This document shows positions 11,995 through 54,041 of a stretch of DNA of 64,000 bases, piece by piece; the first letter of the stretch is position 1; each line of letters begins with the position of its first letter. Under the pieces are notes generated by a model, which searched no databases, was not told the DNA's origin, and saw only the letters and a list, made by a program, of their open reading frames with translations. Both the position numbers and the translations under genes were made by a program. Source of the DNA: Phyllobates terribilis (lineage: Eukaryota); assembly GCF_046119375.1 (NCBI RefSeq), contig NW_027362761.1, forward strand, positions 1,140,800,001 through 1,140,864,000, written 5' to 3'.

Positions 11995-13520
11995 ATGTCT
12001 GACACAGAGCAGCAGCAGCTGACGCCACGGCCACAGTCGCTACCACCTTCACTACCACCTCAGTCTGCTCGCCGGTCTAGAGGGTCCAGTGGAAGGAGCA
12101 GCAGTCGTCCCAGTCAGAAGGGTAAAGCTTCTCAGGACTCCACGGTCCAGGAGGGATGAGTTGCGTATCCTGAAACAGTCTTCAATTCCGGTATCCGCGG
12201 TAGCGGGGTGAGTGATCTTCATGAATGTCACTAGATATATTTGCTAATGGGACTCCTATTGGGTGTTTAAATCACCAGGAGGAACCCAGGAAAGTTACCG
12301 CCAAGAAGCGGAACAGGGAATGTGCGAAATGCAAATACCCCCTAGCAATAGACTGGCAGAAGGAGCTCTGCTCGGACTGCATTCAGAGAACCATTTGGGA
12401 GGGTTCCCCGGATTTTGCAGCTAGCCTCAGGTCTGTCATCAGATCGGAGGTAGAGGGTTCCCTTAAAACAATTTTGAGGAAAATTTTAGAAAAATCATAT
12501 CTGATCCTTCTTCTGACTCCTCTGTTATCAGATGGACAGAGTCGTAGTGGGGCCTCATCCTCTTCAGACAGTGATAGAGGGGGGGAGACCATGCTTCCCT
12601 TTGGAAGACACAGATAGATTGGTGAAAGCTGTCAGAACCACTATGGGGCTAAAGGAAGATTAATCTGTTAAGTCCCTAAAAGACATCATATGTTTGGAGG
12701 GTTGGAAGAGAAGAAAAAACGCATCTTTCCGGTGAACGCTAAGGTCCAGGCACTTATCAATAGGGAATGGAGGAAGCCTGAGAAAGTAGGGGCCTTGCCT
12801 TCATCCTCAAAAAGGAAATATCACTTTGGCCAAAAGGACTCTGAAAACTGGAATAAGGTGCCAAAAATTGACGCTGCTGTATCTAGATCAAAGAGATCGG
12901 CACTCCCTCTTGAGGACTTAGGGGTACTTAGAGACCTGTTAGACAAGAAGGCAGATGCCTTCTTAAAGCATACTTGGGAATCAGCAGCAGGAGGTCTAAA
13001 ACCAGCCATTGCAGGATCGTGTACCGCTCGTTCCTTTATGGTATGGTTACAGCAGTTGGAAAATCAGCTGAAAGATAAAAAGACCTCAAGGGAAAAAATT
13101 CTAGCCAACCTTCCCCTATTGCATGGTGCGTCCGCCTTCCTAGCAGATACCTCTGTGGACTCTGTAAAACTGGCAGCTAGGTCGGCTGGTCTATCAAACT
13201 CGGCAAGACGAGCTCTGTGGCTCAAGGGATGTCCTGGGGACTTACAATCAAAGTCTAGATTGTGTTCTATCCCGTGATGGACAATTTCTCTTTGGCAAAA
13301 AATTGTAAGATGTCCTTGAGAAAGCGAGCGACAAAAAAGGAAGATTCCCTGGGTTTTCGGCGGACGCCAGGGAGACCTATTTTCGGAGGGGGAAATTTAG
13401 TAGAGGTCGCCCCCATGGGAGAAAAAAGAAAGTGGGATTTGAAGAACAAGAAAGAGTCTGGATATATGTTCGGAGGTCCCTCCGCCGCCTCCAAAAAACC
13501 TCCACAATGACGCCAGGCCA
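11995..13520 (+). pseudogene. DIRS ORF1 gag-like (CxxC...CxxC motif, LAP2alpha-like domain), broken by stops and frameshifts
   Basis: CAKC...CSDC; EWRKPEK...WNKVPKIDAAV...LPLED...DKKAD resembles DIRS gag/LAP2alpha domain. Confidence 0.75.
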
Positions 13521-13539
13521 CAAGTAGGAGGAAGACTGT

Positions 13540-15315
13540 CTCATTTTGTTCAGGCCTGGGAAAACATTTCCTCCAGTCCCTGGGTCCTCAACATAGTGTG
13601 GGATGGATTAAGGATTCAATTCCTTCAGCGACCAAGGCGCTCGTTTGTGATGACCACTGTAAGAAAATCCCCAGACGAACAGCTGGCCCTAGAATCAGAG
13701 ATCTTGAGCCTCTTGAACAAACGAGTGCTATGCGAGGTTCTGGTCAGTCAAAAAGGAAGGGGATTTTATTCCCCTCTCTTTCTAATAAAAAAACCCAGAC
13801 GGTTCATTCAGAACTATTATAAATCTAAAAGGCCTCAACCGATTTGTAGACAACCATATATTCAAAATGGAATCGATAAATTCAACAATAAAGCTTCTTT
13901 TTCACAATTGCTTTATGGCGGTGATAGAGCTCAAAAACGCGTATTATCACGTCCCAATTCACTCAGACCATCTGAAGTATCTAAGGGTTGCTCTTTACAT
14001 CCAAGGAAGTTGCAGACACTTCCAATTCCAAGCTCTTCCCTTCGGGTTATCGATTGCTCCAAGGGTATTCACCAAGCCAATAGCCGAGGTGACGTCCTTT
14101 CTCCGCATTCAAAACACAGTCATAATACCATATCTGGACGACTTCCTTATAGTGGGGAATTCAGAGAGCCACTGTATTTCACAACTGAAACAAGTCATGG
14201 TTGTCTTGCAGAACTTAGGCTGGTTGGTCAACACCCAAAAATCAAGACTAGAACCCGTAAGGGTCCAGGCCTTTCTGGGATTTAGTCTAAACTCCGAGTG
14301 TCAGACTTGTCTTCTACCCGACAGCAAAATAGACAGTCACAAATTTGGTCTCGGCAGCCATACACACCCCAGACACGTCCTTGAGGAAGGCTATGTCCCT
14401 GCTAGGTACTCTAACATCATGCATTCCGGCGGTCAAGTCGGCCCAAGTTCACACAAGAAACCTTCAGTGGGAAATCTTGTCAGCACAAAAATTGTTAAAA
14501 GGGTATTTAGAAGGAAAGGTACATCTCTCCTTGCGAACCAGGAAATCCCTCTTGTGGTGGACAGACAGGTCAAATTTAACTTTAGGGGTCCAGTGGGACC
14601 CACCAGTACAAAACATCATCACGACCAAGTCTCTTGGTCATTTCTAGAGAAAGAGGGGTCGTCAAATCTAAAAGAGCTATGGGCAGTGAGGAACGCTTTA
14701 AAAGGCTTCCTCCCTTTACTCCAGGGTCGTCATGTTTGGGTTGTCAGACAACATAACCACCATGGCTTACATAAACCACCAGGGGGGAACAAGATCTCAT
14801 TCTCTTCTGGAAGCAGTAGGCAGGCTTTTTCAAATAGCGGAGCAAAATCTCCTATCTCTTATGGCGCTACACATTAGAGGCATAGAAAACACGAGAGCAG
14901 ACTTCCTAAGCCGCAACAAGTTGAGACAAGGGGAATGGGCCCTGAATCTCAGAGTATTCTGACAGATAGTACAGCTATGGCGTCTACCAGCGATAGATTG
15001 GTTCGCAGACAAAAACAACAGGAAAGTGGAAAAGTTCTGCTCACTAGACCAAAGGGGAAACCCATTGGTAATAGATGCTCTCCAGATTCCTTGGCGTTTC
15101 CTCCAATAGCTATGATACATCTGGTAGTGAGGAATATCAGGAAGGATCAAGTGAGAGTGATTCTCATAGCCCCCTTTTGGCCAAAGAGACCATGGTTCTC
15201 CCTCCTGAGAATTATGTCACTATCATACCCATGGATTCTACCAGAGACCTTGGACCTTCTGGCACAGGGACCAATATTCCACTCTCAAGTGAAGGGTTTC
15301 CACCTAGCAGCGTAG
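13540..15315 (+). pseudogene. DIRS ORF2: reverse transcriptase, RNase H, adenine-methyltransferase-like domain, frameshifted
   Basis: LPFGLSIAPRVFTK and YLDD (14131-14142); LKELWAV, DNITTMAYINHQGG, HIRGIENTRADFLSR; AFPP...LIAPFWPKRPWF. Confidence 0.9.
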
Positions 15316-16332
15316 AATTTGAGAGGGCAATATTGAGGGGCAAAGGTTTTTCAACAGGTTTAGTGTCTACTCTATTAAGAAGTAGAAAGCCCATAACCAG
15401 CAAAATCTATGCTATGGTAAAATTTTTAGATTTCCTAGGAAAGCAGTTAAGCCAAAAACCTTCAATTAATTCCATCCTGGAGTTTTTACAGAAGGGGTTT
15501 GAGTTAGGTCTGGCTACCAGTACGTATAAGGTCCAGGTTTCTGCCTTGGGTGCGCTATATAACCGTAATCTCGCAGCCAATAAATGGATTACAAGGTTCA
15601 TTAATTCTTGCGGTAGATCTAGGCCAGTCTCAATACCCAAAGTTCCCCCATGGAACCTGAATTTAGTGCTTGACGCCCTAACTATAAAACCCTTTGAACC
15701 AGTTCCAGTTCAGGAGTTGTCTGCAAAATACATAACTCTCAAAACAATTATTTTGGTGGCTTTAACATCAGCCCGTACAGTAAGTGATTTGCAGGCCCTA
15801 TCCATAAATCCTCCATATACACAATATTTGAGGATAGAATAGTATTGAGGCCTGATCCAGCCTACCTTCCCAAGGTTGCGCTCAAGTTTCATAGATCTCA
15901 GGAAATTGTTCTGCCCTCCTTTTGTAACAACCCGAACAAAAGTTTCATAACCTTGATGTTAGAAGGGCTTTTTTACAATACATAAATGTAACTAGCCAGT
16001 GGAGGCGCAGCCAATCCCTGTTTGTAGCCTTCCAGGGGAGTAGGAAGTGTTATGGTGTGACAAAAGCAACTATATCCAGATGGATTAGGGAGGCCATTTG
16101 CTTAGCCTACTCTACTAGTAACACCCCGATCCCTGACAGCATCAAGGCGCACTCCACCAGAGCCGTGGCTACCTCCTAGGCAGAGAAGACAGAGGTATCG
16201 ATATATCAGATCTGTAAGGCCGCTACCCGGTCATCACCATCTACCTTTTTCAAACCCTATCGTTTGGATCTATCCTGCCTATCTGACTTAACCTTTGGTA
16301 GAAGGGTGCTGCAAGCGGTGGTCCCTCCCTAA
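15310..16332 (+). pseudogene. DIRS ORF3 tyrosine recombinase, disrupted
   Basis: LALTSAR(T)VSDLQAL; HSTR (16150-16161) followed by a premature TAG, then ICKAAT...TFFKPYRLD. Confidence 0.88.
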
Positions 16333-25290: not shown

Positions 25291-26884
25291 CAGTGAAGGA
25301 AATAAGTATTTGATCCCTTGCTGTTTTTGTAAGTTTGCCCACTGACAAAGACATGAACAGTCTATAATTTTAAGGGTAGATTAATTTTAACATTGAGATA
25401 GAATATTCCCCCAAAAAATCATGAAAATCACATTGTATAAATTAGATAAATTTATTAGCATTTTGCAGTGAGAAATAAGTATTTGATCCCTCTGGCAAAC
25501 AACACTTAATACTTGGTGGCGAACCCCTTGTTGGCAAGCACAGCAGTCAGACGTTTCTTGTAGTTGATGATGAGGGTTGCGCACATGTCAGGAGGAGTTT
25601 TGGTCCACTCCTCTTTGCAGATCATCTCTAAATCATTCAGATTTTGAGGCTGTCACCTGGCAACTCAGAGCTTCAACTCCCTCCATAAGTTTTCTATGAG
25701 ATTAAGGTCTGGAGACTGGCTAGGCCACTCCATAACCTTAATGTGCTTCTTTTTGAGCCACTCCTTTGTTGCCTTGGCTGTATGTTTTGGGTCATTGTCT
25801 TGCTGGAAGACCCAGCCACAACCCATCTCCAATGCTCTTACTGAGGGAAGGAGGTTGTTGGCCAAAATCTCGCCATACATGACCCCATCCATCTTCCCTT
25901 CAGTGCGGTGCAGTCGCCATGTCCCCTTTTCAGAAAAGCACCCCCAAAGTATAATGTTTCCCCCACCATGCTTCACGGTTGGGACGATGTTCTTAGGGTT
26001 GTACTCATCCTTCTTCTTCCTCCAAACATGGCGAGTTGAGTTAATGCCAAAGAGCTCAATTTTTGTCTCATTTGACCACAGCACCTTCTCCCAATAACTC
26101 ACAGAATCATCCAGGTGTTCATTGGGAAACTTCAGACGGGCCTGCACATGTGCCTTCTTGAGCAGGGGGACCTTTCGGGCACTGCAGAATGTTAAACCTT
26201 TAAGACGTAATGTGTTACCAATGGTTTTCTTGGTGACTGAGGTCCCAGCTGCCTTGAGATCATTAACAAGTTCCCATCGTGTAATTTTAGGCTGATCTCT
26301 CACTTTCCTCATGATCAAGGATACCCCATGAGGTGAGATTTTGCATGGTGCCCCAGATTGATGTCGATTGACAGTCATTTTGTATTTCTTCCATTTTCTT
26401 ACTATTGCACCAACAGTTGTCTCCTTCTCACCCAGCGTCTTACTTATGGTTTTGTAGCCCATCCCAGCTTTGTGCAGGTCTATGATCTTGTCCCTGACAT
26501 CCTTAGAAAGCTCTTTGGTCTTGCCCATGTTGTAGAGGTTAGAGTCTGACTGATTAATTGAGTCTGTGGACAGGTTTCTTTTATACAGGTGACTATGGAA
26601 GACAGCTGTCTTTAATACAGGTAACGAGTTGATTAGGAGCATCTAACTGGTCTGTAGGAGCCAGAACTCATAATGGTTTGTAGGGGATCAAATACTTATT
26701 TCTCACTGCAAAATGCTAATAAATTTATCCAATTTATACAATGTGATTTTCTTGATTATTTTTTGGATATTCTATCTCTCAATGTTAAAATTAACCTACC
26801 CTTAAAATTATAGACTGTTCATGTCTTTGTCAGTGGGCAAACTTACAAAAACAGCAAGGGATCAAATACTTATTTCCCCCCCTG
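25291..26884 (-). mobile_element. Near full-length Tc1 (DD34E), inactive
   Basis: TA flanks; long TIRs; [17 protein letters not shown]...QDNDPKH...SPDLNLIE with 34 residues D to E; first D changed to N (WSNETK); TGA stops near the C-terminus. Confidence 0.95.
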
Positions 26885-38084: not shown

Positions 38085-38450
38085 AAACGTTGAATGTGCC
38101 CCAAAATGGTATTAAATAAGACTACAACGTTATTGGAAAAATGAAAAATTTACGGCAGAAGAGAATGGCAGCACATACCCAACTTTTTTTTTTATTCTTC
38201 TTTTTCTTTATTATTTTCAAAAAAGTTCAACATTTTTCACTGGCTTCAAAAAGCGAGTAAGTAGTCCACCAAAAGTACAGTGAACGCCCTATATTAAAGC
38301 GTGGGAGAAGGCGGAAAAAGAATTCACACCATTAGAAATATGTGGAATTAATGTGATGCCCATTGATGTCAATGGAGCTCCTGCCTTCTGTTCACCCATT
38401 ATATTGTTTTGTAGTCCTGCATGTGAATGATGTTTATGTCCATTCATGAC

Positions 38451-38978
38451 TAGTGTTGAGCATTCCGATACTGAAATATCGGGTATCGACCGATATTCGC
38501 GGTATCGGAGTTCAGATACTGAGTTCCGATACTTTTACAATATCGAATACCGGAATCGGAAGTTCCCATAATGCCTGCGCTCTGCAGTGTCTCTGAAGGA
38601 TGACAAGCTGGATGGCAGCGCTCAGCTGCGATCCAGCCTGTCATCAGAATGCCATCCCAGCGTGGGAGAATTCTCCTGCTCAAGCGCTGACATTACATTA
38701 TCTCCCTTACATTACAATTAAATAGAATAGCAGGAATTAATATTTTTTTAAGACGTTAATGCCACAGCCATGGTGGTTGTGGCATTACAGTGATTGCCCA
38801 AATCGATGGATCAAGGAATCAAGGAAAGAAAGGGTTTATTTTCATTACGATATTTGTGTCCCATTGACTTGCATTGGTTTCCGGTATCGGAATCGGCGAT
38901 ATCCGATACTCAAAAAGTATCGGCCCGATCCAATCCGATCCGATATTTCCTGATATCGGAAGGTATCGCTCAACACTA
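38451..38978. mobile_element. hAT-type non-autonomous element (MITE)
   Basis: Terminal inverted repeats (TIRs) TAGTGTTGAGC / GCTCAACACTA; perfect 8-bp TSD TTCATGAC (38443-38450, 38979-38986); subterminal CCGATAY repeats. Confidence 0.85.
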
Positions 38979-38992
38979 TTCATGACCCTATA

Positions 38993-40198
38993 GCGCGGTG
39001 TGGAGAGCAGCCCGATACCTGGAGCTAGAGAGCTGAGCGCGGCCAGTCCCGCACCGCCTGCCGCCGCTGACTGCATGTATTTACTGTCTAGTGGCTCCCA
39101 CTTATCCCGCCGCCGCCGCCAGCAGCAGCACCCAGGCCCGGAAGGACCGCGACAAGAGAAGCGCCTGAGCCCGGGCTGTGAGGTGCTGAATGCAGATTAA
39201 CAGGGATGCCCAAAGAAAAATATGACCCTCCTGATCCTCGTAGAATATATACAATCATGTCAGCAGAAGAGGTGGCCAACGGCAAGAAGTCTCACTGGGA
39301 TGAATTGGAAATTTCTGGGAGGGTGCACAGTTTAAGCACATCGCTTTGGTCATTGACTCACTTAACTGTGTTGCACCTCAGTGATAACAACCTCTCTCGT
39401 ATTCCACCTGATATTGCCAAGCTCCACAATCTGGTTTATTTGGACCTCTCTTCCAATAAGCTCAGAAGTTTACCAGCAGAGCTAGGGAACGTTGTGTCTC
39501 TCAGGGAATTGCTTTTAAATAACAATCTGTTACGGGTTTTACCTTATGAGCTGGGGCGACTGTTCAGGCTTCAGACCCTGGGGTTAAAAGGCAATCCTTT
39601 ATCACAGGATATTCTCAGTCTGTACCAGGAACCAGATGGGATCAGAAAGCTACTTAACTACATGCTTGACAATCTAGCAGTTCATCCAGAACAGCTTCCT
39701 CAGAGGCCGTGGATAACGTTAAAAGAACGAGACCAAATTCTCCCCTCAGTTTCCTTCACAGTTATGTGCTACAATGTCCTTTGTGATAAATATGCTACAA
39801 GGCAGCTTTATGGCTATTGCCCTTCCTGGGCATTAAATTGGGAGTACCGGAAGAAAGGAATCATGGAAGAGATTGTCAGCTGTGATGCGGATATCATCAG
39901 CCTTCAGGAAGTTGAAACCGAGCAATATTTTACCCTTTTCCTGCCAGCATTAAAAGAACGTGGATATGATGGTTTTTTTTCTCCAAAGTCACGTGCCAAA
40001 ATAATGTCAGAGCAAGAGAAGAAGCACGTGGATGGATGTGCAATATTTTTCAGAACAGAAAAATTTTCCTTGGTGGCAAAACACACTGTGGAATTCAACC
40101 AGGTAGCGATGGCAAATTCCGAGGGGTCAGAAGCTATGCTGAATAGAGTTATGACAAAGGATAATATTGGCGTATCTGTTTTGTTAGAAGTTTCATGA
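38993..40198 (+). pseudogene. CNOT6L: Processed, 3'-truncated CNOT6L retrocopy with GC-rich 5' UTR and open 330-aa ORF (39206-40198), antisense in TRMT44 intron 1
   Basis: Intronless MPKEKYDPPDPRRIYTIMS...LRRs...YNVLCDKYAT...IISLQEVE...LLEV; 14-bp direct repeat TTCATGACCCTATA at 38979-38992 and 40192-40205; no poly(A). Confidence 0.93.
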
Positions 40199-40604
40199 CC
40201 CTATATGTAGATTTTGCATTTTATAATCTGCCATTGTTACTGCCATTTCAATTGGCTGATCATATGAGGTTTACAGAAATATGTGGGGGTGTACTCTGTT
40301 TTCTAGGGCTTGATAAAGACCTATCCAATATGTAAGGTTGAAACATTGCCGTCTCCCTGTATTATGTGATGTACTAATAAAAAAGAAGATCCTTTTTGCT
40401 ATTGTGGAAGCTGTTGTCGCTCTCTTCCCCTTTGGATCTTACGGAGGATTGGGATCATCCTCTTTTTCGCATACTTGCAACCACTACCTACATATCAATG
40501 TATTTGTGCTGAGGTACAGCCTTACACTTGTATTTTTCTAAATGTGCTACCATAGCCTGCAGCATCTCTGGACTTGTCTCCCATCGAGCACACTTGGGTC
40601 ATCA

Positions 40605-41040
40605 TTGCAGAGGGAGCTGCCTGCAGCGGATCTTGATGATTTGTCCAATTGCACAGGGAGCTGCCAGCAGCGGATTTTGAGGATTTGTCCAAAAGCACAG
40701 GGAGCAGCCAGCAGCGGATTTTGAGGATTTGTCCAAATGCACAGGGAGCTGCCAGCAGTGGATCTTGATGATTTGTCCAATTGCACAGGGAGCGGCCATC
40801 AGTGGATTTTGAGGATTTGTCCAAATGCACAGGGAGCTGCCAGCAGCAGATCTTGATGATTTGCCCAATTGCACAGGGAGCTGCCAGCAGCGGATTTTGA
40901 GGATTTGTCCAAATGCACAGGGAGCTGCCAGCAGCGGATCTTGAGGATTTGTCCAATTGCACAGGGAGCTGCCAGCAGCAGATTTTGAGGATTTGTCCAA
41001 ATGCACAGGGAGCTGCCAGCAGCGGATCTTGAGGATTTGT
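40605..41040. repeat. 44-bp minisatellite, about 10 copies
   Basis: Unit GCACAGGGAGCTGCCAGCAGCGGATTTTGAGGATTTGTCCAAAT with alternating variants. Confidence 0.93.
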
Positions 41041-50887: not shown

Positions 50888-52458
50888 TACAGGCCAAAAG
50901 TTTGGACACACCTTCCACTGAAGCATCAAAACTATGAATTAACACATGTGGAATTATATACTTAACAAAAAAGTGTGAAACAACTGAAAATATGTCTTAT
51001 ATTCTAGGTTCTTCAAAGTAGCCACCTTTTGCTTTGATGACTGCTTTGCACACTCTTGGCATTCTCTTGATGAGCTTCAAGAGGTAGTCACCGGAAATTG
51101 TTTTCACTTCACAGGTGTGCCCTGTCAGGTTTAATAAGTGGGATTTCTTGCCTTATAAATGGGGTTGGGACCATCAGTTGTGTTGTGCAGAAGTCTGGTG
51201 GATACACAGCTGATAGTCCTACTGAATACACTGTTAGCTGCTTTTTTCTTGCCATAATACATATTCTAAGTAAAGAAAAACGAGTGGCCATCATTACTTT
51301 AAGAAATGAAGGTCAGTCAGTGCGAAAAATTGGGCAAACTTTGAAAGTGTCCCCAAGTGCAGTTGCAAAAACCATCAAGCGCTACAAAGAAACTGGCTCA
51401 CATGTGGACCGCCCCAGGAAAGGAAGACCAAGAGTCACCTCTGCTTCTGAGGATAAGTTTATCCGAGTCACCAGCCTCAGAAATCGCAGGTTAACAGCAA
51501 CTCAGATTAGAGACCAGGTCAATGCCACACAGAGTTCTAGCAGCAGACACATCTCTACAACAACTGTTAAGAGGAGACTTTGTGCAGCAGGCCTTCATGG
51601 TAAAATAGCTGCTAGGAAACCACTGCTAAGGACAGGCAACAAGCAGAAGAGACTTGTTTGGGCTAAAGAACACAAGGAATGGACATTAGACCAGTGGAAA
51701 TCTGTGCTTTGGTCTGATGAGTCCAAATTTGAGATCTTTGTTTCCAACCACCGTGTCTTTGTGCGACGCAGAAAAGGTGAACGGATGGACTCTACATGCC
51801 TGGTTCCTACCATGAAGCATGGAGGAGGAGGTGTGATGGTGCGGGGGTGCTTTGCTGGTGACACTGTTGGGGATTTATTCAAAATTGAAGGCATACTGAA
51901 CCAGCATGACTACCACAGCATCTTGCAGCGGCATGCTATTCCATCCGGTTTGCGTTTAGTTGGACCATCATTTATTTTTCAACAGGACAGTGACCCCAAA
52001 CACACCTCCAGGCTGTGTAAGGGCTATCTGACCAAGGAGGAGAGTGATGGGGTGCTACGCCAGATGACCTGGCCTCCACAGTCACCAGACCTGAACCCAA
52101 TCGAGATGGTTTGGGGTGAGCTGGACCGCAGTGAAGGCAAAAGGGCCAACTAGTGCTAAGCATCTCTGGGAACTCCTTCAAGATTGTTGGAAGACCATTT
52201 CCAGTGACTACCTCTTGAAGCTCATCAAAAGAATGCCAAGAGTGTGCAAAGCAGTCATCAAAGCAAAAGGTGGCTACTTTGAAGAACCTAGAATATAAGA
52301 CATATTTTCAGTTGTTTCACACTTTTTTGTTAAGTATATAATTCCACATGTGTTAATTCATAGTTTTGATGCCTTCAGTGTGAATGTACAATTTTCATAG
52401 TCAAGAAAACACAGAAAAATCTTTAAATGAGGTGTGTCCAAACTTTTGGTCTGTACTG
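50885..52458 (+). mobile_element. Full-length Tc1-like element with DD38E spacing (Intruder-type), inactive
   Basis: TIRs CAGTACAGGCCAAAAGTTTGGACAC / GTGTCCAAACTTTTGGTCTGTACTG; TA flanks; SDESK, QQDSDPKH, NPIE with 38 residues D to E; start codon inverted; frameshift near 52130. Confidence 0.93.
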
Positions 52459-52466
52459 TATATATA

Positions 52467-54041
52467 CAAACTGCTCAAAAAAATAAAGGGAACACTTAAA
52501 CAACAGAATATAACTCCAAGTAAATCAAACTTCTGTGAAATCAAACTGTCCACTTAGGAAGCAACACTGATTGACAATCAATTTCACATGATTTTGTGCA
52601 AATGGAATAGACAATAGATGGAAATTATTGGCAATTATCAAGACACACTCAATAAAGGAGTGGTTCTGCAGGTGGGGACCACAGACCACATCTCAGTACC
52701 AATGCTTTCTGGCTGATGTTTTGGTCACTTTTGAATGTTGGTTGTACTTTCACACTCGTGGTAGCATGAGACGGACTCTACAACCCACAGAAGTTGCTCA
52801 GGTAGTGCAGCTCATCCAGGATGGCACATCTATGCGAGCTGTGGAAAGAAGGTTTGCTGTGTCTGTCAGCGTAGTGTCCAGAGGCTGGAGGCGCTACCAG
52901 GAGACAGGCCAGTACACCAGGAGATGTGGAGGGGGGCCATAGGAGGGCAACAACCCAGCAGCAGGACCGCTACCTCCGCCTTTGTGCAAGGAGGAACAGG
53001 AGGAGCACTGCCAGAGCCCTTCAAAATGACCTCCGGCAGGCCACAAATGTGCATGTGTCTGTACAAATGGTTAGAAACCGACTCCATGAGGGTGGTATGA
53101 GGGCCCGACGTCCACAGATGGGGGTTGTGCACACAGCCCAACACCGTGCAGGACGCTTGGCATTTGCCACAGAACACCAGGATTGGCAAAGTCGCCACTG
53201 GCGCCCTGTGCTCTTCACAGATGAAAGCAGGTTCACACTGAGCACATGTGACAGACGTGACAGAGTCTGGAGATGCCGTGAAGAGCGATCTGCTGCCTGT
53301 AACATCCTTCAGCATGACTGGTTTGGCAGTGGGTCAGTAATGGTGTGGGGTGGCATTTCTTTGGAGGGCCGCACAGCTCTCCATGTGCTCGCCAGAGGTA
53401 GACTGACTGCCATTAGGTACCGAGATGAGATCCTCATACCCCTTGTGAGACCATATGCTGGTGTGGTTGGCCCTGGGTTCCTCCTAATGTAGGACAATGC
53501 CAGGCCTCATGTGGCTGGAGCGTGTCAGCAGTTCCTGCAAGATGAAGGCATTGAAGCTATGGACTGACCCGCCCGTTCCCCAGACCTGAATCTGATTGAG
53601 CACATCTGGGACATCATGACTCGCTCCATCCACCAACGTCACGTTGCACCACAGACTGTCCAGGAGTTGGCGGATGCTTTAGGCCAGGTCTGGGAGGAGA
53701 TCCCATAGGAGACCATCCGCAACCTCATCAGGAGCATGCCCAGGCGTTGTAGGGAGGTCATACAGGCATGTGGAGGCCACACACAATACTGAGCCTCATT
53801 TTGACTTGTTTTAAGGACATTACATCAAAGTTGGATCAGCCTGTAGTGTGCTTTTCCACTTTAATTTTGGGGGTGACTCCAAATCCAGGCCTCCATTGGT
53901 TAATAAATTTGATTTCCATTGATGATTTTTGTGTGATTTTGTTGTCAGCACATTCAACTTTGTACAGAACAAAGTATTCAATGAGAATATTTCATTCATT
54001 CAGATCTAGGATGTGTTATTTGAGAGTTCCCTTTATTTTTT
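52467..54041 (+). mobile_element. Degenerate Tc1 (DD34E) adjacent to the DD38E element
   Basis: Left end CAAACTGCTCAAAAAAATAAAGGGAAC, right end GTTCCCTTTATTTTTT; [14 protein letters not shown] at 52766; [21 protein letters not shown] with stops. Confidence 0.9.

What the first reader, a model, noticed from the sequence alone, without database searches (positions are those of the whole stretch)
38993..40205. CNOT6L retrocopy with an open 330-aa ORF encoding LRR plus half a deadenylase: candidate dominant-negative CCR4 variant
Seen: intronless copy with 5' UTR, no stop or frameshift over 330 codons, cut off at ...LLEV, with in-frame TCA TGA supplied by the 14-bp TSD. Established: the CCR4/CNOT6L LRR docks on CAF1 (CNOT7/8), and the EEP nuclease needs C-terminal motifs (ADLN, IDY, SDH). 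These are absent here, while YNVL and LQEV are kept. Inference: if translated, it could occupy CAF1 without deadenylating. It may equally be a young, unexpressed copy.
Basis: partly seen in the sequence, partly recalled or inferred. Interest (0 to 1): 0.75.

Follow-up and report, generated by a model that had tools for sequence, protein, structure and literature searches.

The report
Young truncated CNOT6L retrocopy in frog
A poison-frog genome holds a very recent, intron-free, half-length copy of the mRNA-decay gene CNOT6L; its open reading frame is what such a young copy shows by chance, so it is most likely an ordinary new pseudogene, pasted in by an unusual route.

Summary
Window 38993-40191 (+) is a spliced copy of CNOT6L mRNA: a 5' leader plus codons 1-329. 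It is flanked by a perfect 14-bp duplication, and the duplication supplies the last base of Val329, Ser330 and the TGA.

The 330-aa ORF keeps the LRR and 2 of the 5 catalytic residues (Asn195 and Glu240, human numbering), so it cannot be a nuclease.

The copy is very young. Only one residue (R41H, a CpG transition) departs from the frog consensus. Its lineage carries 6 synonymous and 1 non-synonymous unique changes, like the working genes of Dendrobates (5+0) and Ranitomeya (6+2). At this age a neutral ORF stays open with probability 0.3-0.8, so openness says nothing about function.

Expression, selection and presence in other frogs could not be tested. 

The insertion is non-canonical. It has no poly(A), it ends inside an exon, and its duplication starts at the same base as the 8-bp duplication of an adjoining hAT MITE. 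The scan noted this same stretch before (s1-205011), and it noted other poly(A)-less retrocopies elsewhere in this genome.

Verdict: an ordinary young retrocopy. The dominant-negative idea is unsupported.

The parts
38443..38450 (.). Left 8-bp target-site duplication (TTCATGAC) of the hAT-type MITE
   Evidence: Direct repeat D12. It fits the hAT target pattern nTnnnnAn (own knowledge of the pattern).
38451..38978 (.). hAT-type MITE, 528 bp. It has 11-bp perfect terminal inverted repeats (TAGTGTTGAGC / GCTCAACACTA) and many subterminal CCGATA/TATCGG repeats.
   Evidence: Termini fit YARNG. CpG o/e is 1.17. A related copy sits in the first intron after the start-codon exon of R. variabilis CNOT6L.
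38979..38992 (.). Left copy of the 14-bp duplication of the retrocopy. Its first 8 bases are also the right duplication of the MITE.
38993..40191 (+). Processed (spliced) copy of CNOT6L mRNA, complete at the 5' side and cut at the 3' side inside an exon, with no poly(A)
38993..39195 (+). Presumed 5'-leader exon (GC 0.66, CpG o/e 0.78 over 38993-39205). It is joined where the orthologues have an AG acceptor before ATTAACAGGGATG.
   Evidence: The exon itself was not found within 10 kb upstream in three orthologous loci, so its parental origin is inferred.
39206..40198 (+). Open reading frame of 330 codons plus TGA: CNOT6L residues 1-329, then Ser, then stop
39326..39328 (+). Codon 41, CAC (His) where all four frog genes compared read CGC (Arg). 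This is the only amino-acid change and is a CpG transition.
39356..39601 (+). Leucine-rich repeats (residues about 51-132), the Caf1/CNOT7-docking part. Places 39492-39549 inside it were left out of all work.
   Evidence: PMC3057700.
39767..40191 (+). N-terminal 44% of the EEP nuclease domain. It keeps the equivalents of Asn195 and Glu240 and lacks Asp410, Asp489 and His529.
   Evidence: residues 153-329 cover 177 of 398 residues of chain 3ngn_A; PMC10590902.
40192..40205 (.). Right copy of the 14-bp duplication. It supplies the third base of the Val329 codon, Ser330 (TCA) and the stop (TGA, 40196-40198).
40376..40381 (+). AATAAA, 178 nt after the stop. It is a possible poly(A) signal present by chance in the target DNA.
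   Evidence: Read. No test of use.

Best explanation
This is a very recent processed retrocopy of the frog's own CNOT6L mRNA. An RNA molecule that was already spliced but lacked its 3' half was reverse-transcribed directly at a nick in the chromosome and sealed in, with a 14-bp target-site duplication. It has no poly(A), because priming was not on the tail. It ends 24 nt before an exon end, because the template or the priming site was internal.

It sits in transposon-rich DNA, directly against the end of a hAT MITE. The copy is evolving, or about to evolve, as a pseudogene. Its 330-codon frame is open only because too little time has passed for a disabling mutation. If any protein were made, it would be a catalytically dead LRR plus half an EEP domain.

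Shown here: the anatomy, the RNA origin, the loss of catalytic residues, and the lack of any excess change. Inferred: neutrality, the lack of meaningful expression, and the priming route.
For: - RNA origin: at least seven exon joints outside the left-out stretch coincide with exon borders of the D. tinctorius, R. variabilis, A. baeobatrachus and E. coqui genes.
- True insertion: a perfect 14-bp duplication flanks exactly the homologous part.
- Internal 3' end: the three dendrobatoid orthologues read on past GAAGT as CCACAAAGATCTCCC(T/C)GGGGGAG|GTAGGT and E. coqui reads ACAC... there, so the cut is 24 nt inside the exon with no microhomology to the target.
- Youth: unique changes over 309 codons are 6 synonymous + 1 non-synonymous on the retrocopy lineage, against 5+0 (Dendrobates) and 6+2 (Ranitomeya). 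Pairwise distances are 2.6-2.8% among all three.
- Age bound: one non-synonymous change bounds neutral divergence since insertion at about 0.14%, with a 95% upper limit of 0.65%.
- Same-species runs: runs guessed to be RNA hold 0.55-0.62 of the sampled 31-letter words of 38700-40500, of which the copy can give at most about 0.66. That implies at most about 0.2-0.6% difference from what is transcribed.
- Open frame by chance: P(frame still open | neutral) is 0.3-0.8 at these ages.
- The one amino-acid change is CGC>CAC at a residue identical in all ten frog proteins aligned.
- Catalytically dead: only profile positions 2-101 of 225 of Exo_endo_phos remain.
- Surroundings are transposons, with no host exon seen.
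Against: - The 6:1 ratio of synonymous to non-synonymous changes would also fit an older copy under purifying selection (P = 0.0006 if all seven changes were neutral and post-insertion). Only the same-species parent sequence can separate the two, and I could not reach it.
- The copy carries a CpG-rich leader (o/e 0.78) that could have some promoter activity, and an AATAAA lies 178 nt after the stop.
- The word-share argument is indirect. Missing words may reflect coverage, and the kind of each run is only a guess.
Confidence: 0.75

Rival explanations
1. The copy is an expressed retrogene whose truncated protein (LRR plus half an EEP domain) occupies the Caf1 (CNOT7/8) docking site without deadenylating. 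On this reading it acts as a decoy or dominant-negative CCR4.
For: - The LRR is intact, with one substitution.
- The LRR is required for Caf1 binding and for entry into CCR4-NOT (PMC3057700).
- A module holding inactive Ccr4b has no detectable activity in vitro (PMC4613498).
- The start context and leader are inherited, and an AATAAA lies downstream.
- Truncated retrocopy proteins have a precedent in the elephant TP53 copies cited in PMC5470649.
- The syn:nonsyn ratio of 6:1 is compatible with constraint.
Against: - There is no evidence of transcription or translation.
- The open frame is expected by chance.
- The retained 44% of the EEP domain leaves a partial domain that, by inference, is likely to misfold and be degraded.
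- Overexpressed full-length inactive Ccr4b did not change proliferation or viability in MCF7 cells (PMC3057700), so a low-level decoy would have little effect.
- The only amino-acid change is at a residue identical in all ten frog proteins aligned, which points towards relaxed constraint rather than maintained constraint.
- Two upstream ATGs in the leader (39075, 39190) would damp translation.
Confidence: 0.06
2. Origin variant: the first nick was not made by a LINE endonuclease. It was made by a hAT transposase acting on the adjoining MITE end, or arose as a break at that hairpin-prone end. The exposed 3'-OH of the flanking DNA then primed reverse transcription of a CNOT6L RNA fragment.
For: - For a sense-strand insert, target-primed synthesis needs a bottom-strand 3'-OH exactly at the MITE-end/flank border (38978|38979). 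Within 1 nt, that is the bond a hAT transposase cuts first, leaving a 3'-OH on the flank (own knowledge of Hermes chemistry).
- The two duplications start at the same base.
- This MITE family occurs once in the 64 kb window, so an exact hit on one of its ends is unlikely by chance.
- The nick site (GAA/TAG) is unlike the L1 TTTT/AA site.
- No poly(A), and no microhomology.
- Earlier notes list other poly(A)-less retrocopies tied to hAT or MITE DNA in this genome. These are leads only.
Against: - This is a single case noticed after the fact.
- The reverse order gives the same structure: the retrocopy lands first, and the MITE later lands in the left copy of the duplication. TTCATGAC is also the only 8-mer within the 14-mer that fits the hAT target pattern.
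- Endonuclease-independent insertions described in mammals usually lack duplications, whereas this one has a clean 14-bp one.
- An RT source is still needed.
- No orthologous empty or half-filled site could be examined.
Confidence: 0.13
3. The copy matters as RNA, not protein. It might be a source of antisense, siRNA or piRNA against the parental CNOT6L message, or a decoy for its regulators.
For: The near-identity to the parental message inferred would allow cross-targeting. Retrocopy-derived small RNAs are known in other animals (reviewed in PMC5470649).
Against: No transcript was shown on either strand, no inverted duplicate or convergent promoter was seen, and the copy is a single young one.
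Confidence: 0.04
4. It is an assembly or library artefact: cDNA or a chimeric read joined into the contig.
For: The junctions could not be checked against reads here.
Against: A perfect 14-bp duplication of the target flanks exactly the insert, which chimeras do not make. Four DNA runs of one sample hold 0.82-0.86 of the sampled words of the stretch with its flanks, though that sample may be the assembly's source.
Confidence: 0.02

Closest known systems
LINE-1-type processed pseudogenes / retrocopies (target-primed reverse transcription)
   Same: It is an intron-free copy of a spliced mRNA. It is flanked by a target-site duplication whose length (14 bp) lies in the usual 7-20 bp range, and it sits in transposon-rich DNA.
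   Different: There is no poly(A) remnant, and the 3' half is missing while the 5' end looks complete, the opposite of the usual 5' truncation (hallmarks as listed in PMC5470649). The inferred nick site is not TTTT/AA.
Endonuclease-independent LINE insertions at pre-existing DNA lesions (own knowledge: Morrish et al. 2002; Sen et al. 2007)
   Same: 3' truncation, absence of poly(A), and use of a non-consensus site. Here that site may be a break at a MITE end.
   Different: Those events typically lack target-site duplications and often delete target DNA. This one has a clean 14-bp duplication and no deletion.
CNOT6L / CCR4b deadenylase (human structures 7voi, 3ngq)
   Same: Residues 1-329 are collinear and about 94% identical to human CNOT6L. 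The LRR and the first two catalytic residues are present.
   Different: It stops after 44% of the nuclease domain, lacks Asp410, Asp489 and His529, and adds one foreign residue (Ser) before the stop.
Truncated proteins from retrocopies, e.g. elephant TP53 retrogenes (cited in PMC5470649)
   Same: It is a retrocopy whose frame encodes only the N-terminal, partner-binding part of a regulator.
   Different: The TP53 copies are reported there as expressed. No expression, conservation or effect is shown here.

Membership tests
Processed retrocopy of a host mRNA | Introns absent at the positions where the parental gene has them | tested here: met
   Blocks of the copy map to successive exons of four frog CNOT6L genes, separated there by about 70 nt to 11.6 kb.
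Processed retrocopy of a host mRNA | Target-site duplication flanking exactly the copied part | tested here: met
   14/14 identical at 38979-38992 and 40192-40205.
L1-type (poly(A)-primed) retrocopy | Poly(A) remnant at the 3' end and a complete 3' UTR | tested here: not met
   The copy ends at GAAGT, inside a coding exon, and abuts the duplication directly.
L1-type (poly(A)-primed) retrocopy | First-strand nick at a TTTT/AA-like site | tested here: not met
   The inferred bottom-strand site is ...CATGAA/TAGTG if the MITE came first, or ...CATGAA/TGGAC if the retrocopy came first. Read.
Endonuclease-independent retro-insertion | 3' truncation and no poly(A) | tested here: met
Endonuclease-independent retro-insertion | Usually no target-site duplication, often a target deletion | tested here: not met
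   A clean 14-bp duplication is present.
Active CCR4-type (EEP) deadenylase | Five catalytic residues: Asn195, Glu240, Asp410, Asp489, His529 (PMC10590902) | tested here: not met
   Only the first two are encoded (N190, E235 of the ORF). The frame stops at residue 330.
Active CCR4-type (EEP) deadenylase | N-terminal LRR that docks on Caf1/CNOT7 | tested here: met
   LRR_4/LRR_8 hits. The sequence is identical to the frog consensus except R41H. Binding itself was not tested.
Functional retrogene | Purifying selection on the copy's own branch | tested here: inconclusive
   The 6 syn: 1 nonsyn count covers a branch that also includes the parental lineage.
Functional retrogene | Transcription and translation of the copy | not tested
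An exact look-up of the 330-aa product was not sent, because it contains those places.
Functional retrogene | Retention at the orthologous site in related species | not testable with these tools
   No tool here searches frog genomes by DNA.
hAT-superfamily MITE (the neighbour) | 8-bp duplication, YARNG termini, terminal inverted repeats | tested here: met
   TTCATGAC on both sides, TAGTG...CACTA termini, 11-bp perfect inverted repeats.

The most novel reading that the evidence does not exclude
The CNOT6L cDNA was primed from the 3'-OH that a hAT transposase (or a break at the hairpin-prone MITE end) left on the flanking DNA. This would be a hand-over from a cut-and-paste transposon to a reverse transcriptase. 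It would explain retrocopies without poly(A), with internal 3' ends and with clean duplications in this frog genome.
Probability: 0.12. Interest if true: 0.65.

Novelty: new member of a known kind. Interest (0 to 1): 0.25.

Why it matters
As a gene, it matters little. It is one more lineage-specific retrocopy, caught so early that its frame is still open, and it shows why an open frame alone should not be read as function. If it were expressed, it would be a natural LRR-only decoy for the CCR4-NOT nuclease module, which would be worth a co-IP. The more useful lead is mechanistic. The insertion has a duplication but no poly(A), an internal 3' end and a junction flush with a hAT MITE end. Together with other poly(A)-less retrocopies noted in this genome, this makes a genome-wide census of how retrocopies are primed in dendrobatid frogs worthwhile.

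Tried and rejected
- **Reads:** Junction support, presence or absence in another individual, and expression therefore all stayed untested.
- **Same-species parent:** the frog CNOT6L cluster lists 15 of its 36 members and none is from this species. Look-ups gave D. tinctorius, E. coqui, A. baeobatrachus and R. variabilis genes at 97.0, 94.4, 95.7 and about 97% identity, none of which is the parent.
- **5' leader exon:** it was not found within 10 kb upstream in three orthologous loci.
- **Shorter relatives:** a search with residues 116-330 for annotated or assembled 330-aa proteins ending in LLEVS found none among cluster representatives. Such a protein could be hidden inside the 90% cluster of the full-length gene, so this blank means little. 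It did show fish CNOT6 models that stop 10-30 residues after the same LLE[VL]. These look like incomplete gene models, not evidence for a natural isoform.
- **Rfam on 38300-39491:** nothing above noise, and no snRNA chimera at the 5' end.
- **Rejected readings:**
  - An end at a splice site, as a free 5' exon or an intronic poly(A) isoform would give. The cut is 24 nt inside the exon.
  - Microhomology priming. The next base expected in the mRNA, C in the three dendrobatoid orthologues, differs from the target's T.
  - LTR-mediated retroposition. There are no LTR flanks, and the duplication is 14 bp.
  - Later deletion of a full-length copy. That would not leave a perfect duplication flush with the cut.

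Full report
**What is there**

- The + strand holds an ATG-started frame of 330 codons at 39206-40198.
- Its product aligns without a gap to residues 6-334 of human CNOT6L (7voi_C, E = 6.5e-211). Residues 153-329 align to the first 177 of the 398 residues of the crystallised nuclease domain (3ngn_A).
- Pfam sees LRR_4/LRR_8 at residues 51-109. It sees Exo_endo_phos at residues 188-306, matching only profile positions 2-101 of 225.
- A perfect 14-bp direct repeat, TTCATGACCCTATA, lies at 38979-38992 and 40192-40205. There is no A-run between the copy and the right repeat.

**It came from spliced RNA**

I fetched the CNOT6L genes of four frogs: Dendrobates tinctorius (L001/L005), Eleutherodactylus coqui (L002/L006), Anomaloglossus baeobatrachus (L003/L007) and Ranitomeya variabilis (L004).

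- Blocks of the window copy map to successive exons. In D. tinctorius these are spread over 34 kb: L001 1489-1618, 9082-9256, 10334-10375, 10445-10536, 13901-13972, 25564-25726, 27919-28078 and 35551-35682.
- The same pattern holds in the other three species.
- Upstream of ATTAACAGGGATG the orthologues have a polypyrimidine tract and an AG acceptor. The window instead continues with 203 nt of GC-rich sequence ending in CAG (38993-39195; the 213 nt up to the ATG have GC 0.66 and CpG o/e 0.78).
- I read those 203 nt as the spliced 5' leader exon. This is an inference, because the exon was not within 10 kb upstream in three orthologous loci.

**Where it ends**

- Homology stops at 40191, after GAAGT.
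- The three dendrobatoid orthologues read on as CCACAAAGATCTCCC(T/C)GGGGGAG and then GTAGGT, and E. coqui differs only in starting ACAC.
- The cut is therefore 24 nt inside the exon, not at a splice site.
- The next base expected in the mRNA (C in the three dendrobatoids) differs from the target's T, so there is no microhomology.
- The third base of the Val329 codon, Ser330 and the TGA all come from the duplication.

**Which frog**

- The copy is 97.0% identical to D. tinctorius exons, about 97% to R. variabilis, 95.7% to Anomaloglossus and 94.4% to E. coqui.
- Over 927 coding sites the three dendrobatid sequences are mutually 2.6-2.8% apart.
- The window therefore comes from a dendrobatid that is none of these.
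- Earlier notes of this scan call the genome the golden poison frog. I did not verify the name.

**Age and selection**

The same-species parent could not be reached, so I polarised changes with the four orthologues over 309 codons, leaving out codons 96-115.

| Lineage | Unique synonymous | Unique non-synonymous |
|---|---|---|
| Retrocopy | 6 | 1 |
| D. tinctorius | 5 | 0 |
| R. variabilis | 6 | 2 |

- The retrocopy lineage is not accelerated, and its mix of changes is that of a working gene. Almost all of that branch was therefore spent as the parental gene.
- The one amino-acid change is R41H (CGC>CAC, base 39327). It is a CpG transition at a residue identical in all ten frog proteins aligned and in human CNOT6 and CNOT6L.
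- With 726 non-synonymous sites, one such change puts neutral divergence since insertion at about 0.14%, with a 95% upper bound of 0.65%.
- Independently, same-organism runs guessed to be RNA hold 0.55-0.62 of the sampled 31-letter words of 38700-40500. The copy can contribute at most about 0.66 of those words. If every missing word is due to a substitution, the transcribed parent differs by only 0.2-0.6%.
- In this frame 4.4% of substitutions create a stop. With 0.1-0.15 indels per substitution, a neutral copy of this age keeps its frame with probability 0.3-0.8.

The open frame carries no weight as evidence of function. An older, constrained copy is not excluded: if all seven changes were post-insertion and neutral, P(at most 1 non-synonymous) = 0.0006. 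That reading needs the parent sequence to be shown.

**What the protein could do**

- Human CNOT6L has five catalytic residues: Asn195, Glu240, Asp410, Asp489 and His529. E240A abolishes activity (PMC10590902).
- The frame encodes only the first two (N190 and E235 in its own numbering), so it cannot deadenylate.
- The LRR is required for binding Caf1 and for joining CCR4-NOT (PMC3057700).
- A BTG2-Caf1-Ccr4b module with inactive Ccr4b shows no activity in vitro (PMC4613498). The decoy idea is therefore biochemically coherent.
- Against it, overexpressed inactive full-length Ccr4b did not alter proliferation or viability (PMC3057700).
- Only 44% of the EEP domain is retained. By inference, that partial domain is likely to misfold.
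- The leader has two upstream ATGs, at 39075 (41 codons) and at 39190 (overlapping the main ATG), read.
- No promoter is evident. Upstream lies a MITE, and the rest of the window is DIRS and Tc1/mariner debris with no host exon. An AATAAA at 40376-40381 is available by chance.

**Expression**

Expression was not tested. For the same reason I did not look up the full 330-aa product in transcriptome assemblies.

**How it got there**

- Immediately upstream lies a 528-bp hAT-type MITE (38451-38978). It has 11-bp perfect inverted termini (TAGTGTTGAGC) that fit YARNG, many subterminal CCGATA/TATCGG repeats, and an 8-bp duplication, TTCATGAC, at 38443-38450 and 38979-38986.
- The MITE's right duplication is the first 8 bases of the retrocopy's 14-bp duplication.
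- For a sense-strand insert, target-primed reverse transcription requires a bottom-strand 3'-OH exactly at the MITE/flank border. From my own knowledge of hAT chemistry, that is within 1 nt of the first transposase nick, which leaves a 3'-OH on the flank.
- This family occurs once in the window, so the coincidence is notable. It was, however, noticed after the fact.
- The reverse order gives the same structure: the retrocopy lands first, and the MITE later enters the left repeat. TTCATGAC is also the only 8-mer in the 14-mer that fits the hAT target pattern.
- Canonical L1 hallmarks are a poly(A) remnant, an intact 3' end and frequent 5' truncation (PMC5470649). The first two are absent and the truncation is at the opposite end.
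- The event resembles endonuclease-independent insertion in its 3' truncation, but unlike such insertions it has a clean duplication.

I rate a generic LINE-type reverse transcriptase acting on a 3'-shortened mRNA as most likely, and the transposase-nick hand-over at about 0.12-0.13.

**Verdict**

This is a real, very young and non-canonical CNOT6L retrocopy, most probably a nascent pseudogene. The dominant-negative reading is coherent but unsupported. The scan had already noted this same stretch from the junction angle (s1-205011). It had also noted other poly(A)-less retrocopies elsewhere in this genome, but no other CNOT6L copy.

Noticed in passing
window 38443-38992: A hAT-type MITE (38451-38978) has an 8-bp duplication (TTCATGAC) nested at the start of the retrocopy's 14-bp duplication. 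The MITE keeps a CpG o/e of 1.17 and many CCGATA/TATCGG subterminal repeats, so it also looks young.
   Followed up: partly
L004:5506-6546: A related copy of the same MITE family (79-88% identity at its arms) sits in the first intron after the start-codon exon of Ranitomeya variabilis CNOT6L. The family is therefore shared among dendrobatids.
   Followed up: no
window 39075-39225: The leader has two upstream ATGs: a 41-codon uORF (39075-39200) that ends 6 nt before the main ATG, and an 11-codon out-of-frame uORF (39190-39225) that overlaps it. They are presumably inherited from the parental mRNA.
   Followed up: no
window 40606-41040: A tandem array of 9.9 copies of a 44-bp unit at 90% match, 400 nt downstream of the insertion. 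It gives long spurious ORFs on the minus strand.
   Followed up: no
L001:10375-10445 (also L002 4332-4409, L003 12018-12100, L004 13544-13611): A conserved mini-intron of about 70 nt lies between two CNOT6L coding exons in all four frog genes.
   Followed up: no
proteins P0135, P0078, P0090, P0114: Fish CNOT6 gene models of 330-359 aa stop 10-30 residues after the same LLE[VL] position. They are probably incomplete models ending at the next exon border, not proof of a natural half-nuclease isoform.
   Followed up: partly
window 12690-15842, 25665-26642 (-), 51098-53492: Neighbouring transposon ORFs: a reverse transcriptase (RVT_1) and a LAP2alpha-like domain in a DIRS-like element, and Tc1/mariner transposases with HTH_SB/DDE_3 domains.
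   Followed up: no
run X14 (organism B): A run labelled as a different organism still holds 0.51 of the sampled words. That organism's CNOT6L message is therefore within about 1% of this copy, making it a very close sister species or a labelling issue.
   Followed up: no
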